From the NCBI GenBank assembly GCA_053919585.1, contig CM132786.1: a DNA stretch of 64,000 nt; one strand, written 5' to 3'. The notes beneath the pieces were generated by a model. That model had not been told where the DNA came from, did not search any database, and worked only from the letters and a program-made list of their open reading frames with translations. The stretch is from Euprymna scolopes. Taxonomy: Eukaryota. A program made the position numbers and the translations under genes. Shown here piece by piece: positions 28,525 through 33,325 of this stretch (positions within the stretch are counted from its first letter, which is position 1; the number at the start of each line of letters is the position of its first letter).

Positions 28525-30255
28525 TAAACGTGTCTGTCTGTGCGTGATTGTATGTATGTCTGTGTACATTTTCCTACGCCATAGCTCTGTCAATTTTCAG
28601 TCTACAGACACGAAATTTGATATACAGGATAATGAGAAGTCTACTAAATCTCTCGGTGAATTTTCAGTCTAAACACTCGATATTTTAGGTATAGGTTCCT
28701 TGGACATCGATCTTAGGAAATTGATGTGAGCCCAAAATAATAAATGTTAAGCGGTAATAATAGGGGTCAAATAAAAAAAAATGGCCGCTTTTTTCTTCTT
28801 TTTGCTCAACATACACCTCCAATACCCGGTCAGCGCCGGAGTTAAATGCTAGTGTATATATCTAAAGCAGTCAATGTGGCTCTGTGTGTGTCTGTATGTC
28901 TATGTGTCTGTGTGTGTACGTTTTTCTTAGAAATACCTCTGCCAATTTTAAGTCTCAAGACTCGACATTGGATATACAGGGTAATGAGATTTGCGAAAAC
29001 CTTTGTAATCCGTTTTCGGACCGAAATTTGGCTGTTAAATGGTGACAATTCCACGATTTGACATTTAAGAACTCTACCAAACGTCTCCGACAATTTTGGG
29101 TATAAACAATTGAAATTTAAGATATAGATTCCCTTGACATGGATCTAACTTTATAACTTGATGTGAGACCTAGAGGATAAACCTTAAGGGGTCATAATAG
29201 GGGTCAAAGTTTTAAAAAAATTACCTTTGCGGCCTCTACTAAATTACTCAGTAAATTTCTTATATAAACTTTTTAAATATTACATAAAGGGCATGCGGTG
29301 ATCGGGCCAGCATTTTAATCGGTTTCGGTCGAAAAGTTTTAGTCACCAATATATAAATGTATGCATGTATATATGTTTGCATGTCTGCCAAAAACTTTCG
29401 ACCGAGGCGACGGATTTTTACAAAATCAGTATCGTGTTGAAGTTCGACAGTTCAAACGGCAAATACCGGAAAATTAGCTAAAACCATTAATATCTCCACA
29501 TTCAACTGGGCACTTTTCTACAGGGGGTCACTTTTTTCGCCGATATTTTTGAAAGTCATTCTCTCCTTACGATCGTCTAGCCTTTATTAAACCTACGCCA
29601 CTTCCGGTTTAGCAGTGGTCGTAAGAACAAAGACGGCAGAGATTTCCCGTTATTTTCCTTCTTCGCAGTACGGGTTTGAACCTGCCTTCCTACTACCAAT
29701 TATTTTTTTTTACTAAACACAGACACCCAAACTCCCGGGCAACGCCGGACACCCATGTTAGTATCTATAATATTGAACATGTATGTGTTTCTGTGTAAGT
29801 TTCCTCACGCAATAACTCTGTCAACGTTCAGGCTACAGACTCCAAATTTTATATACAGGGTACTGAGATGTGGGAAAATCTTCGTGATCGGTTTCGGCCA
29901 GAAATTTGGCTGTTAAAGGGTAAAGGTTCAATGATTTTGCCTTGGTGAGCTCTTCCAAACTCCTCCGACAAGTTTGGGTCTAAACACTTGACATTTTAGA
30001 CATACGTTTTTTGGACAAGGATCTAACTGAAGAATGTTATTTGAGCGCCAAACAATGAAAATTAAGGAGTTATAATAGGGGTTAAATAAAAAAAAATGAC
30101 CGCTTTTTAAAAATATTTTTGGTTAAGATACACCTCGAAACAACCGGACCCTATCGGGCTGAAATGCTAGTATTATAATAGATACGAAATGTAAATTTAT
30201 CAAATGTAATATTTAAGCATATTTGGCGACCGCGCAGTGCCGAGTGGCTTGCTAG
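28472..30255 (+). mobile_element. Head-to-tail Helitron array: short A (28472-28852), long B (28861-29761), short A (29764-30170), extra 3' terminus (to 30255)
   Basis: Each unit begins ATCTA plus a TG-rich tract and ends with a hairpin and CTAG/TTAG|T: CCGGTCAGCGCCGG...GCTAG, CCCGGGCAACGCCGG...GTTAG, CCGGACCCTATCGGG...GCTAG, CCGCGCAGTGCCGAG...GCTAG. Confidence 0.88.
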
Positions 30256-30408
30256 TACCAAATATAATGATTTTGCAGAAATTGGAGCCATCTAAATTGT
30301 CCACTAAGACTATAATCTTTTTTCAAATATTCATAGTGAGCATTTATTTGATTTGAAAAATAATCATATACGCATGAATATATATAAATAACATACATAA
30401 CAGACCTT

Positions 30409-30451
<43 letters not shown>

Positions 30452-30687
30452 CTAAACATCCTTTTTTATTTTTGTGTACTTATATTCATATTAAAAACCA
30501 TCCTTTCTATTAGTATTTATTTGCTCTCCCACCAAAGCAAAATATGACACGAGGTCGTGTTTAATGTGGGGTAAAATTAGCTCCTAGAAAAAAAGGCACT
30601 TTGTTTGGGACAAAAAATAATAATTTCCCAAATATAGAGGGTTTTCCCTCCATTGATCGGGAAATATGAACTTCAGTGCATATCTGC

Positions 30688-30730
30688 AGAACAGATACTA
30701 CACATTGCTCCCGGCCCGAATGCCAAGATC
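30688..30730 (-). pseudogene. U2 snRNA 5' fragment (head of downstream monomer)
   Basis: Minus strand TCTTGGCATTCGGGCCGGGAGCAATGTGTAGTATCTGTTCT. The last 16 nt match the conserved U2 sequence GUGUAGUAUCUGUUCU exactly (U2 recalled from memory). Confidence 0.75.
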
Positions 30731-30918
30731 AACAGTGTATTTATTTACGTCCCAACTGAGTAAATCGTTTTTTTAGAGATTGGGGAAATCCGGACCAGCT
30801 CCCCTTGGAGTAGGGGAGCTGAATTGTGACAATTGGTATAAAGGGTTTTCCCTACATCGGCCAATAACTTATATATGGGGTTGCCCCCACATATGGTCTT
30901 TGCTTACATTATCTGCCG

Positions 30919-30960
30919 GATCAGATACTACCCTTTGATCCCGACCAGAAGGCCAAGAAC
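30919..30960 (-). pseudogene. U2 snRNA 5' fragment (head of upstream monomer)
   Basis: Minus strand TTCTTGGCCTTCTGGTCGGGATCAAAGGGTAGTATCTGATC versus invertebrate U2 TTCTCGGCCTTATGGCTAAGATCAAAGTGTAGTATCTGTTC: about 33/41 identical by hand alignment. Confidence 0.75.
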
Positions 30961-31284
30961 AACAATAAAAGGCACCCCTCTTTTCTGTTTATTTAAGAGA
31001 AAATACCATTTTCTTATATATGGGTTGTGAAACTGCATTCACTATCACAATATCTAGCTCATTTGCACATTCTTTTAAACATTCATTTTAATTAATTCCC
31101 TATTAGTTTTTTTTTCGGTTTTCTTATGAGATGATCATCTTTAGTTAAGTATTACGGATAATTATATTCATGCATATATTCTACATGATTTATATTGGCA
31201 TAATATTTGCGTAAAAAGTTTACAGTAAACAGAAAATTGTTCCCATATATATTTATGTATACGTATATATTTTTGTTTAATCAA

Positions 31285-32499
31285 TCTATATATCTACAAA
31301 AGTGAATACATCTGTGTGTCTGTGAGTGTATGTGTATGTACATTTTCCTACGCAATATCTCTGTCAATTTTAAATCTACAAACTCGAAGTTTGATATACA
31401 GGATACTGAAATTTGAACAAACATTTTTGTGGTCGGTTTTTGGACATAAATGTTGCTGTTAGGGATAAAACCTCAACGATCTGGCCTTTGAAAACTCTAC
31501 CAAACTTCGAAACTTTTGGGTGAAAACACTTGATATTTTAGATATAGGTTTCTTGGATATTGGTCAAAAATAATAACTTGAGACGAGTGCAAAACTATAA
31601 AGATGAAGGAGTCATAATAGGTGTTGCAGTTTTAAAAAAAACTGACCTTTTTTTTTTGCTGCACATGCACCTCCAAAAACAAGCGCAACACCGGGTTGAA
31701 ATGCTTGTATATCTATATAAGATAAGGCATCTATGTGTGTGCCTATGTGTGTGTCTGTGTACAGTTTTCTACGGGTACTGAGATTTGGGAAATCTTTGTA
31801 ATCCGTTTTCAGCCAGAAATTTGGATGTCAAAGGGGTCAAAGTTCAACGATTTGACCTTTAATAACTCTACTAAATGAACTCGAAAATTTTGCGTATACA
31901 CACTTGAAATTTTAGATATAGGTTCCTTGGACATGGATCTAACTTAATTTGATATGAGCCGAAAGGAATATTTATTAATGGGTCAAAATTACAAAAAAAA
32001 AATGACCGCTGCGGTTTCTACCAAATTACTAAGACAATTTCTGGGCTAAACATTTGAAATTTGACATGAAGGATATTCAGAGATAGGGCACGCTTTATAA
32101 TCGGTTGATCGAAAATCATTAGTTACCAATATATGAATGTGTGTGTATGTATGTTTGCATGACTGCGTAAAACTTTCAACAGAGGCGACGGATTTTACCA
32201 AGATCTTTACAGTTTTGAAGCTCGACCCTTCAGACGATGAATGCTAAAAACAATAATATCTTCAACTTACATTTGCAGTTTTCTACAGGGGTCGCTTTTT
32301 TCGCCGATATTTTTTAAAGTACCTTTCTATCGGATTGTTTACCCTTAATTAAAACCTACGTTACACCTGGTGTGGCGGTGGTACTAACAGCAAAGCCGTC
32401 GCATTTTTCCCGTTCTTTTCCTCCTTCGCGGTACGGGTTGAGGCCTGCCTTTCTACTAACAATTTTTTTATTTTTTTTGCTCAATATACACATCCGCTC

Positions 32500-32556
<57 letters not shown>

Positions 32557-33325
32557 AAAGTGTTTGTCTGTCTGTCTGTACTTTTTCTGTCTGCATTCAT
32601 TGCCCTACGTTATATCTCTGTCAATTTTCAGTTTACAGATTTGACTTTTGAGAAATCTACCAAACTCCTCCGATTATTTTGTGTCTGAAAGCTTGAAATT
32701 TAAGATATAGGTTCCCGGGAGATGAATCTAACGTAATAATAGGAGGTTAGCCCAAAGGAATAACTGTTGTTTTGTCATAATAGTGGTCAATTCTTTAAAA
32801 AAATGACCTCTGTGGTCGCTACCAAATTTCTCAGACAATTCCTAGTTTAAACATTTAAAATTTGATATAAAGGATTAAAGAGATAGGGCAAGCTTTTTAC
32901 TCGGGTTCGGTCGAAAATTTGAGCTACCAATGTATAAATGTATGTATGTATGTTTGCTTGTCTAACTATAACATTCGACAGATGTGACGGATTTTCAAGA
33001 GATCAGTATGGTTTTTGCAGTCGACAAATACAAAAAACTGACTAAAAACGTTTATTTCTTCATATTAAACTGGCCACTTTTCTACAACGAGGGGTCGCTT
33101 TTTTCACCAATATTTTCGAAAGTGATCCCCTGTTTACGATTGTCTAGCCTCTATTTTAACCTACGTCACTTCCGGTTTGGCGGTCATCGGAACAGCAAAG
33201 ACGTCACGTTTTTTCTTCCTATTTTCTACTCCTTCTCGGAACCGGTTCGACCCTGCCTTCCTCCTACCACTTTTTTGCTCAACATACACCTCCGAACATC
33301 CAGTCAAGTCGGGCTGAAATGCTAG
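31285..33325 (+). mobile_element. Second Helitron array: short A (31285-31707), long B (31712-~32500), long unit with A-type terminus (~32555-33325)
   Basis: Same body sequence as 28472-30170. Termini GCGCAACACCGGGTTGAAATGCTTG|T and CAGTCAAGTCGGGCTGAAATGCTAG. Confidence 0.88.

What the first reader, a model, noticed from the sequence alone, without database searches (positions are those of the whole stretch)
30513..30962. Candidate U2 snRNA-headed SINE-like retroposon, present as a head-to-tail dimer
Seen: two ~230-bp minus-strand monomers, each starting with ~42 nt resembling the U2 snRNA 5' end. One has an exact GTGTAGTATCTGTTCT that includes the GUAGUA branch-point recognition sequence. 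Both then switch to non-U2 sequence at about the same point (..GCAGAT), share GGAAAACCCT, and end in TGGGA..AAATAAATAC. Known: snRNA-headed SINEs are rare (SINEU in crocodilians), and the non-LTR elements Utopia and Keno insert specifically into U2 genes near this position. Inference: this is either a U2-derived SINE family in an invertebrate-like genome or a non-autonomous derivative of a U2-targeting element. It is not a plain truncated U2 pseudogene, because both heads carry a related body and tail.
Basis: partly seen in the sequence, partly recalled or inferred. Interest (0 to 1): 0.8.

Follow-up and report, generated by a model that had tools for sequence, protein, structure and literature searches.

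The report
U2-headed retroposon pair, self-stacking family
The two repeats are old copies of two subfamilies of a very abundant short mobile element whose front end was copied from spliceosomal U2 RNA; that front end holds the site where known U2-homing LINEs cut, which would explain why the family piles up head to tail tens of thousands of times.

Summary
On the minus strand lie two head-to-tail units, A (30965-30737) and B (30736-30513). Each starts with about 41 nt that match this genome's own U2 snRNA (33/41 and 32/41) and leaves U2 at nt 46/47. They are not two copies of one monomer. They are two subfamilies with the same head, different bodies and a shared tail of about 55 nt that ends in AAATAAATAC.

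The family is large: 7,505 candidate loci, and copies bounded by 15-18-bp target-site duplications. Its main junction is tail + C + ATCTGTTC, that is, the tail followed by U2 from nt 38/39. This 19-mer occurs 46,134 times exactly, against 0 for the control. Published Keno and Utopia LINEs leave downstream U2 starting at nt 39. None of about 1,200 genuine U2 genes is split there.

My best reading is a LINE-dependent, U2-headed SINE that carries its own landing pad. I did not find the partner LINE, and how the element is transcribed is unknown. The window copy is old (85-87% identical to consensus), non-coding, and sits in a nest of other retroposons.

The scan has already reported this family on other DNA of the same genome. 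snRNA-headed SINEs are published only from crocodilians.

The parts
30987..31285 (-). Unit 'X'. A separate short retroposon-like repeat directly upstream; it ends in TTAAATAAAC. It is not U2-derived.
   Evidence: Eight loci carry contiguous homology. Copies have variable 5' truncation points and different upstream flanks. L004 and L057 hold copies with no U2 units attached.
30960..30986 (-). Non-U2 leader AGAAAAGAGGGGTGCCTTTTATTGTTG in front of A's head. The family consensus is (T)AGAAAAGAGGCTTGCCTTTTTTCTGTTG.
   Evidence: The leader is present, in full or 5'-truncated, at the 5' end of arrays with unrelated flanks (L019, L023, L027, L028, L008). It does not resemble the upstream flank of real U2 genes.
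30919..30959 (-). Unit A head, copied from U2 snRNA nt 6-46. It includes stem-loop I and the branch-point-binding GUAGUA.
   Evidence: 33/41 identical to the genome's U2. Rfam U2 scores 22.5 bits, below threshold.
30793..30918 (-). Unit A body (A subfamily: ..GCAAAGACCATATGTGGGGGCAACCCC..GTAGGGAAAACCCT..CAGCTCCCC..GGGGAGCTGG). No similarity to U2.
   Evidence: Consensus built from 33 A units. The window copy is 84.7% identical to it and has deletions near the tail.
30737..30792 (-). Unit A tail. It holds a 3' hairpin (TTTAC..GTAAA in this copy) and ends in AAATAAATAC at 30737.
   Evidence: Alignment of 68 tails. The helix is paired in 92% of cells. This copy carries the single GC->AU double change.
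30688..30736 (-). Unit B start (ACTGTTGA) and head. 30728-30688 matches U2 nt 7-47, with GTGTAGTATCTGTTCT exact.
   Evidence: 32/41 identical to the genome's U2. Rfam U2 scores 29.2 bits, below threshold. The junction type 'tail then full head' has 537 exact genome matches.
30570..30687 (-). Unit B body (B subfamily: GCAGAT..GGAGGGAAAACCCTCT..). It contains T6-T7 runs.
   Evidence: Consensus built from 33 B units. The window copy is 86.6% identical to it.
30513..30569 (-). Unit B tail, homologous to A's tail. Hairpin TTTGCTTT..AGAGCAAA; ends in AAATAAATAC at 30513.
30440..30512 (-). 'ext'. A conserved stretch of about 70 nt (TAATAGAAAGGATGGTTTTTAATATGAATATAAGTACAC...) that follows the last B unit in most loci. 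It starts like the leader.
   Evidence: It follows 20 tails in the 28 loci examined. L057 and RNA reads show X joined directly to ext with no U2 units between them.
30402..30459 (.). (TA)n microsatellite that closes the composite.
   Evidence: Other loci end in (TA)n or (GATA)n at the same place.

Best explanation
The locus is a two-unit stack (A, then B) of a very abundant family of non-coding, LINE-dependent retroposons, that is, SINEs.

Each unit has three parts:
1. a head copied from about the first 47 nt of this lineage's U2 snRNA;
2. a subfamily-specific body of about 120-135 nt;
3. a shared tail of about 55 nt with a conserved 7-bp hairpin, ending in AAATAAATAC.

Inferred mechanism. A site-specific LINE, not identified here, recognises the tail in trans and nicks DNA in the conserved U2 sequence GTAGTA^TCTGTTC. 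Keno (Tx1 clade) and Utopia use this same site. Every element carries that site in its own head, so new copies land mostly in older copies. This gives: head(1-47)-body-tail-[ATCTGTTCC-body-tail]n. The repeated ATCTGTTCC is best read as the target-site duplication, which would also explain why the heads stop at nt 47.

The window copy belongs to the rarer class in which a tail is followed by a complete head. It is old and shows no sign of a function of its own.

Shown: family membership, three-part anatomy, copy numbers, target-site duplications, the position of the junction, and the absence of split genuine U2 genes.
Inferred: the LINE partner, the cleavage chemistry, the TSD reading of nt 38-47, and transcription from flanking or upstream promoters rather than from the head.
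For: - Head: identity to the genome's own U2 includes the lineage-specific extra A in GAUCAAAGUGUAGUA. Similarity ends at nt 46/47.
- Family size: the dimer query finds 7,505 candidate loci, and the 63 scored matches are 73-82% identical.
- Anatomy: the A and B consensus sequences share the head and the 55-nt tail but not the body.
- Tail hairpin: paired in 92% of cells, against 43-65% when the partners are slid. One pair alternates UA (26 sequences) and CG (20) between subfamilies.
- Retroposition: arrays bounded by target-site duplications of 15 bp (L019) and 18 bp (L008), and variable 5' truncation.
- Self-targeting: AAATAAATACCATCTGTTC occurs 46,134 times exactly (control 0), spaced about 183-218 bp. 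Intact SINE-type heads number 2,773 and tail-to-full-head junctions 537.
- Published site: downstream U2 starts at nt 39 for Utopia, and Keno's 3' flanks are identical to Utopia's (PMC4640811).
- Array make-up: arrays mix A, B and C bodies. Adjacent A units are barely more alike (median 91.1%, n=10) than A units from different loci (88.8%). In 8 of 12 runs of nt-38 units, the unit just upstream carries a full head.
- No ORF of 70 aa or more lies in the units.
- Contigs of two other coded organisms hold the same sequences and junctions.
Against: - I found no LINE that shares the tail. The three youngest LINE families (ORF2 of 1323, 1051 and 1231 aa) do not share it. The one RT-bearing element seen next to a U2 head is a Ty3/Gypsy fragment.
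- None of about 1,225 genuine U2 genes is interrupted at the site. This is odd for a U2-homing enzyme.
- An extra C follows the tail in nearly all stacked junctions, whatever the next unit's start point, but not in solo copies. That pattern could instead mean template jumping or copying of ready-made multimers.
- U2 genes have no internal promoter, and the leader and B body contain T6-T7 runs, so transcription is unexplained.
- PolyA RNA-seq shows reads on both strands and no discrete ends.
- The loci were retrieved using the dimer as query, so the frequency of A-B arrangements is biased.
Confidence: 0.72

Rival explanations
1. Multimers form in a single event by template jumping. The LINE reverse transcriptase reaches the 5' end of one SINE RNA, adds an untemplated base, and continues on the 3' tail of another SINE RNA. 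Heads stay next to tails without any targeting of U2 sequence. This may apply in particular to the window's 'tail then full head' A|B junction.
For: Nearly every unit that follows a tail starts with the same extra C, whether it begins at nt 38, at about +1, in the leader or inside the body. Solo 3' ends instead read ATACA or ATACT. Target-site duplications bracket whole multi-unit arrays (L019, L008). Full heads that follow a tail begin within 1-2 nt of the U2 +1 position.
Against: This does not explain why one start point, nt 38/39, outnumbers all others by about 85 to 1 (46,134 against 537). Nor does it explain why that point coincides with the published Keno/Utopia cleavage site. It would need a dominant RNA species that starts exactly there.
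Confidence: 0.15
2. A U2-derived satellite. An ancient chimeric U2 pseudogene became a tandem repeat of about 210-250 bp that spread by unequal crossing-over and segmental duplication. It would resemble U2_sat of Ciona, and would not be mobile as single units.
For: Long regular arrays with periods of about 183-218 bp. L006 holds four nearly identical 260-bp units in tandem, and their adjacent pair is 96% identical. The junction 19-mer is identical across 46,134 copies.
Against: - There are thousands of dispersed loci on all large contigs.
- Solo copies and short arrays are bounded by 15-18-bp target-site duplications in unique DNA.
- Units show 5' truncation.
- Arrays mix subfamilies with different bodies.
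- Adjacent units are not markedly more alike than units from different loci.
Confidence: 0.08
3. Variant U2-like snRNA genes, or some other functional small-RNA gene pair.
For: Stem-loop I and the branch-point-binding sequence are kept. The stem carries compensating changes and a UUCG loop. The Rfam model aligns end to end, although weakly.
Against: - Scores of 22-29 bits against a threshold of 46, and against 161 bits for the real gene.
- There is no stem-loop IIa/IIb, III or IV homology, and BLAST finds nothing past nt 47.
- Tens of thousands of copies, 8-15% diverged from their consensus.
- No PSE-bearing conserved upstream flank.
- No discrete RNA ends.
Confidence: 0.02

Closest known systems
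SINEU (SINEU-1/-2/-3 of crocodilians; Kojima 2015, PMC4494074)
   Same: Short non-autonomous retroposons whose 5' head is a piece of U1 or U2 snRNA. The head has no known internal promoter. Some copies have 5' extensions that imply transcription from flanking DNA. Insertion favours one specific repeat. A target-specific Tx1-type LINE is the suspected partner.
   Different: SINEU ends in polyA, and the paper reports it from crocodilians only. It prefers a Mariner element as target, not its own head. The present family ends in a specific hairpin plus AAATAAATAC, and its head is cut at U2 nt 47. It stacks into its own U2 piece (46,134 junctions) and lives in an invertebrate, probably molluscan, genome. 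Sequence homology to SINEU bodies could not be tested.
Keno (Tx1 clade, APE endonuclease) and Utopia (restriction-like endonuclease): U2 gene-targeting LINEs (PMC4640811)
   Same: The 3' junction is the same. Downstream U2 begins at nt 39 (TCTGTTC..) if the terminal A seen in solo copies is assigned to the tail, and 1 nt earlier otherwise. Occasional tandem insertion is described for Utopia-1_NVit.
   Different: Keno and Utopia are autonomous, protein-coding elements found inside genuine U2 genes. Here the units are non-coding, genuine U2 genes are untouched, and the targets are U2 fragments carried by the elements themselves. No cognate LINE was identified here.
U2_sat of Ciona (a U2 gene-derived satellite that serves as a landing site for YURE/Utopia-like LINEs; mentioned in PMC4640811)
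   Same: A repeated U2-derived sequence, outside functional U2 genes, that is associated with U2-site-specific elements.
   Different: U2_sat is described as a satellite target, not as a retroposon with a body, a LINE-type tail and target-site duplications. No sequence comparison was possible.
Ceph-SINEs and other mollusc SINEs (tRNA-headed; PMC5786205, PMC4758252)
   Same: Short LINE-dependent retroposons of molluscs with a three-part structure.
   Different: Those have tRNA-derived heads with Pol III promoters and CORE/Ceph central domains. This family has a U2 head and unrelated bodies.

Membership tests
SINE (LINE-dependent short retroposon) | Short, non-coding and highly repeated at dispersed sites | tested here: met
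   Units are 225-235 nt with no ORF of 70 aa or more. There are 7,505 candidate loci on many contigs.
SINE (LINE-dependent short retroposon) | Marks of retroposition: target-site duplications and 5' truncation | tested here: met
   Target-site duplications of 15 bp (L019) and 18 bp (L008). Units have variable 5' starts. The window copy itself has no clean duplication of its own; it lies within the X...ext nest.
SINE (LINE-dependent short retroposon) | 3' tail shared with a partner LINE | tested here: inconclusive
   Subfamilies A and B share a tail of about 55 nt with a conserved hairpin. No LINE carrying it was found.
SINE (LINE-dependent short retroposon) | Head derived from a small RNA with an internal Pol III promoter | tested here: not met
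   The head is derived from U2. U2 is a Pol II gene with an external promoter (established knowledge; PMC4494074). T6-T7 runs lie in the leader and the B body.
SINEU | Head derived from U1 or U2 snRNA | tested here: met
   33/41 and 32/41 for the window copies, and 36/42 for the consensus, against the genome's own U2.
SINEU | 3' polyA tail | tested here: not met
   Units end in AAATAAATAC(A), not in polyA. The paper states that all SINEU groups have polyA tails.
SINEU | Sequence homology of body and tail to the crocodilian SINEU consensus sequences | not testable with these tools
   No Repbase or Dfam sequences are available here.
Non-autonomous derivative of a Keno/Utopia-type U2-targeting LINE | 3' junction at U2 nt 38/39 | tested here: met
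   Tail + C + ATCTGTTC occurs 46,134 times exactly, control 0. The published site is nt 39.
Non-autonomous derivative of a Keno/Utopia-type U2-targeting LINE | Insertions in genuine U2 snRNA genes | tested here: not met
   A pattern requiring non-U2 bases in front of TCTGTTCTTATCAGCTTAAT... gave one hit, and that is a point-mutated pseudogene. About 1,225 intact U2 copies exist.
Non-autonomous derivative of a Keno/Utopia-type U2-targeting LINE | A cognate autonomous LINE (APE or restriction-like endonuclease plus RT) with the same termini | tested here: inconclusive
   I did not find one. Earlier notes of this scan report Tx1-type LINEs with the same U2 leader, but I could not check them.
U2 snRNA gene (Rfam RF00004) | Covariance-model score at or above gathering (46 bits) | tested here: not met
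   29.2 and 22.5 bits, with no hit at gathering level. The real gene scores 161 bits.

The most novel reading that the evidence does not exclude
This is the first snRNA-headed SINE family outside crocodilians, and it shows how such heads arise. The head would be the upstream target flank (U2 nt 1-47, including the target-site duplication) of a U2-homing LINE system, co-transcribed and then retroposed. Each element would therefore spread a new landing pad for its own machinery. The system has left the few genuine U2 genes and now feeds on itself, producing more than 46,000 stacked units in a genome class that is currently reported to have almost no SINEs.
Probability: 0.5. Interest if true: 0.75.

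Novelty: new variant of a known kind. Interest (0 to 1): 0.6.

Why it matters
- Origin of snRNA heads. snRNA-headed SINEs are known from a single vertebrate order, and how they acquire heads and get transcribed is an open question (PMC4494074). A second, independent and far more numerous family makes a concrete origin testable. Its head ends at the edge of the Keno/Utopia target site, which suggests the head is a target flank plus target-site duplication captured by read-through.
- Escape from a scarce target. The family shows how a target-specific retroelement system can stop depending on a low-copy target by carrying the target with it. That problem is raised explicitly for U2-targeting LINEs in PMC4640811.
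- Repeat annotation. If the genome is a decapodiform cephalopod, this bears on the statement that such genomes contain almost no SINEs (PMC13218726). The taxon is my inference from three facts: 5.9 Gb, at least 46 chromosome-scale contigs, and sequencing runs labelled as mollusc. Tens of thousands of these units would then sit among the 'unclassified' repeats.
- The window copy. It is an old, inert member of the family.

Tried and rejected
- Whole-genome Rfam U2 search failed twice. I replaced it with exact-pattern searches.
- A 48-nt vertebrate-type U2 pattern found nothing. A 24-mer found the real genes.
- Search for genuine U2 genes split at nt 38/39 gave one hit, a point-mutated pseudogene inside another element.
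- Search for the partner LINE:
  - A Pfam RVT_1 search of the genome gave 270,508 candidates.
  - Full-length members of the three youngest families (L055-L057) lack both the SINE tail and the U2 head.
  - L054, an RT-bearing element that abuts a U2 head after ..TCTGTT, looked promising. It is a 5'-truncated Ty3/Gypsy-like element (CCHC gag, YTDAS RNase H), and its other copies have no U2 flank.
- RNA evidence: polyA RNA-seq reads laid at 85% or more come mostly from paralogues, lie on both strands, and show no common start or end. This is no evidence for or against a discrete SINE transcript.
- The leader does not derive from the upstream flank of the real U2 gene.
- My first idea was that AGAAAAGAGG on both sides of the array is simply a target-site duplication in a host element X-ext. 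That is only partly tenable, because the same bases head solo copies that have their own duplications. I keep it as a hypothesis about where the master copy sat.
- Reading the units as functional U2 variants is rejected (see rival explanations).

Full report
**What is there.** On the minus strand the window reads: leader AGAAAAGAGGGGTGCCTTTTATTGTTG (30986-30960), unit A (to 30737), unit B (30736-30513), then TAATAGAAAGG.... Both units open with a U2-like stretch. B has the exact string GTGTAGTATCTGTTCT. Both continue with ..GCAGAT, share GGGAAAACCCT, and end in TGGGA..AAATAAATAC.

**Is the head really U2?** The genome (G000; 5.9 Gb; 925 contigs; window = C4:75888001-75952000) has genuine U2 genes in a 764-bp tandem array on contig C9. 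The 24-mer that spans the head/body boundary of real U2 occurs about 1,225 times. One copy scores 161 bits with Rfam RF00004.
- Against that gene, A aligns at 33/41 (U2 nt 6-46) and B at 32/41 (nt 7-47). The alignments stop there.
- The B consensus is 36/42 identical, and BLAST finds nothing further downstream.
- Heads share the extra A of this lineage's U2 (GAUCAAAGUGUAGUA), so they derive from the host's own gene.
- Rfam hits on the single copies are sub-threshold: 29.2 and 22.5 bits against 46, and none at gathering level.
- The units are U2-derived but are not U2 genes.

**Family.** The 456-bp dimer finds 7,505 candidate places. The 63 scored matches are 73-82% identical and lie on many contigs. 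I cut the arrays of 28 independent loci at the tail motif.
- This gave 33 A-type and 33 B-type units. Their consensus sequences share the head and a tail of about 55 nt (CACATTAAAAA-CG-CCTTGTG-C--ATTT-GCT..GGTGGG..AGCAAATAAATAC) but have unrelated bodies. A third body type, C, also occurs.
- This is the classic three-part SINE layout.
- The tail folds into a 7-bp hairpin seven bases from the 3' end. In 68 tails, 92% of cells pair, against 43-65% when the partners are slid. One pair alternates U-A (26) and C-G (20) between subfamilies. The window's A copy carries the only G-C to A-U double change. The sequences are related, so I treat this as supportive only.
- The window units are 84.7% (A) and 86.6% (B) identical to consensus. 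The median for other copies is about 92%, so this is an old copy.
- No ORF of 70 aa or more overlaps the units.

**Mobility.** Two arrays in unique DNA are bounded by target-site duplications:
- TTAAACTATATCGGA (15 bp; L019);
- TAATAAAATATATCATTT (18 bp; L008).

Units that follow a tail begin at many positions, including the leader, about U2 +1, nt 9, nt 38-41 and inside the body. This is expected from incomplete reverse transcription.

**Stacking.** One class of junction dominates: tail, then C, then ATCTGTTC.., which is U2 from nt 38 onward.

| Sequence counted | Exact matches | Reversed control |
|---|---|---|
| AAATAAATACCATCTGTTC (tail + C + U2 nt 38 on) | 46,134 | 0 |
| SINE-type intact head 24-mer | 2,773 | 0 |
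| Tail followed by a full head (the window's A\|B type) | 537 | 0 |

- The 46,134 matches lie in runs spaced 183-218 bp.
- The Utopia paper states that U2 downstream of insertions starts at nt 39, and that Keno's 3' flanks are identical (PMC4640811).
- Solo copies end in ..ATACA. If that A belongs to the tail, the downstream remainder here is TCTGTTC.., the same nucleotide as in the paper.
- The head ends at nt 47, and every stacked unit begins with nt 38-47. The simplest reading is that ATCTGTTCC is the target-site duplication and that 'heads' are target flanks carried along. This is inference.
- Arrays mix A, B and C units.
- Adjacent A units are hardly more alike (median 91.1%, n=10) than A units from different loci (88.8%, n=478).
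- In 8 of 12 runs of nt-38 units, the unit just upstream carries a full head.
- These points favour repeated insertion over local tandem duplication. L006 also shows a nearly identical tandem quartet, so some duplication or multimer copying occurs as well.

**Points that do not fit neatly.**
- No genuine U2 gene is split at the site.
- An extra C follows the tail in nearly all stacked junctions, whatever the next unit's start, but not in solo copies. That hints at template jumping or at propagation of ready-made multimers.
- U2 has no internal promoter. The leader and the B body hold T6-T7 runs that argue against Pol III.
- The leader is not the real U2 upstream flank.
- Solo copies keep a leader, in full or 5'-truncated (from AGAAAAGAGG down to GAGG), in front of the head. 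The same bases open the 70-nt 'ext' that follows most arrays.
- A paralogue (L057) and RNA reads (joint 30511->30998; 36 reads from 23 starts) show X joined directly to ext with no U2 units.
- I therefore suspect that a master copy sat inside such an X-ext element and was transcribed from its flank. SINEU-2B was inferred to be transcribed in the same way from a Mariner flank. This is a hypothesis.

**Partner LINE.** I could not identify it.
- The three youngest LINE families lack the tail.
- An RT-bearing element that abuts a U2 head turned out to be a truncated Gypsy-like element.
- Further fetching was blocked.
- Earlier notes of this scan, made on other windows of the same genome, report Tx1-type LINEs with the same U2 leader. 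They also report about 50,000 stacked units and about 1,187 unsplit U2 genes. My own counts agree with the last two. The LINE claim remains unchecked by me.

**Distribution and expression.**
- Contigs of two other coded organisms (runs X3 and X7) hold the head, A, B and X sequences at 85% or more, including tail-to-head joints. The family is therefore not private to one assembly.
- Some runs that hold part of the stretch are labelled as mollusc.
- PolyA RNA-seq of the same species covers the units on both strands without defined ends. This fits passenger transcription and says little about a source RNA.

**Comparison and novelty.**
- The nearest described class is SINEU: U1/U2-headed, polyA-tailed, reported from crocodilians only, preferring a Mariner target, with a Tx1-type partner suspected (PMC4494074).
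- The present family shares the head type, the promoter puzzle and the link to target-specific LINEs.
- It differs in tail, host phylum, copy number and, above all, in targeting its own head at the Keno/Utopia site.
- Full-text searches found no U2-headed SINE described from molluscs.
- A 2026 cuttlefish genome paper states that decapodiform genomes have almost no SINEs.
- I class it as a new variant of a known kind. The same family has been found repeatedly by this scan elsewhere in this genome.

Noticed in passing
G000:C9 ~168.867-168.969 Mb (loci L035-L042): Genuine U2 snRNA genes form a tandem array with a 764-bp period. The diagnostic 24-mer occurs about 1,225 times genome-wide. The 199-nt gene scores 161 bits and has one extra A before GUGUAGUA.
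   Followed up: partly
window 30987-31285 (-); L057 70-361; L004 824-1041: 'X' is a separate retroposon-like unit of about 300 bp with variable 5' truncation. It ends in TTAAATAAAC, an end like that of the U2 units. In L057 it is joined directly to the 70-nt 'ext' with no U2 units between them. RNA reads show the same joint.
   Followed up: partly
window 28537-30140 and 31311-33300: Several copies of another repeat, 'R' (pieces of about 400-880 bp), bounded by (TA)n tracts, flank the nest on both sides. In L057 the R end reads ..GGAGTTTGGTAGGCAACATTTTTTAAATAAATA. Several non-coding families may therefore share one 3' end motif and one mobilising enzyme.
   Followed up: partly
28 of loci L001-L030 (L011 and L020, which overlap L002 and L015, left out): all tail junctions: Nearly every unit that follows a tail begins with an extra C (CATCTG.., CCTGTTG.., CTTGCC.., CATATG..). 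Solo 3' ends instead read ATACA or ATACT. This is unexplained. It may be an untemplated base at 5' junctions or a sign of template jumping.
   Followed up: partly
L054 623-2552; L064 3986-6274: A Ty3/Gypsy-like element (CCHC gag, RT, YTDAS RNase H; about 69 candidate copies at 85-92% identity). One 5'-truncated copy abuts a U2 head right after ..GTAGTATCTGTT. This is probably coincidence.
   Followed up: yes
L055 (C15:99.78 Mb), L056 (C1:0.11 Mb), L057 (C35:19.70 Mb): Three LINE families have many copies with intact ORF2 (1323, 1051 and 1231 aa) and near-identical RT scores, so they are very young. RVT_1 has 270,508 candidates in this genome.
   Followed up: partly
L043 1470-1575 (G000:C4:3.234 Mb): A 3'-truncated U2 pseudogene with GTGTACTATCTG lies embedded in what looks like a transposase-like ORF region.
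   Followed up: no
L013 ~270-560: A GC-rich insert of about 290 bp (CGCCTGGGTAATACCTAGGAGG...GCAGCATTTAAATAAAA) interrupts a B unit. Its end is again AAATAAA-like.
   Followed up: no
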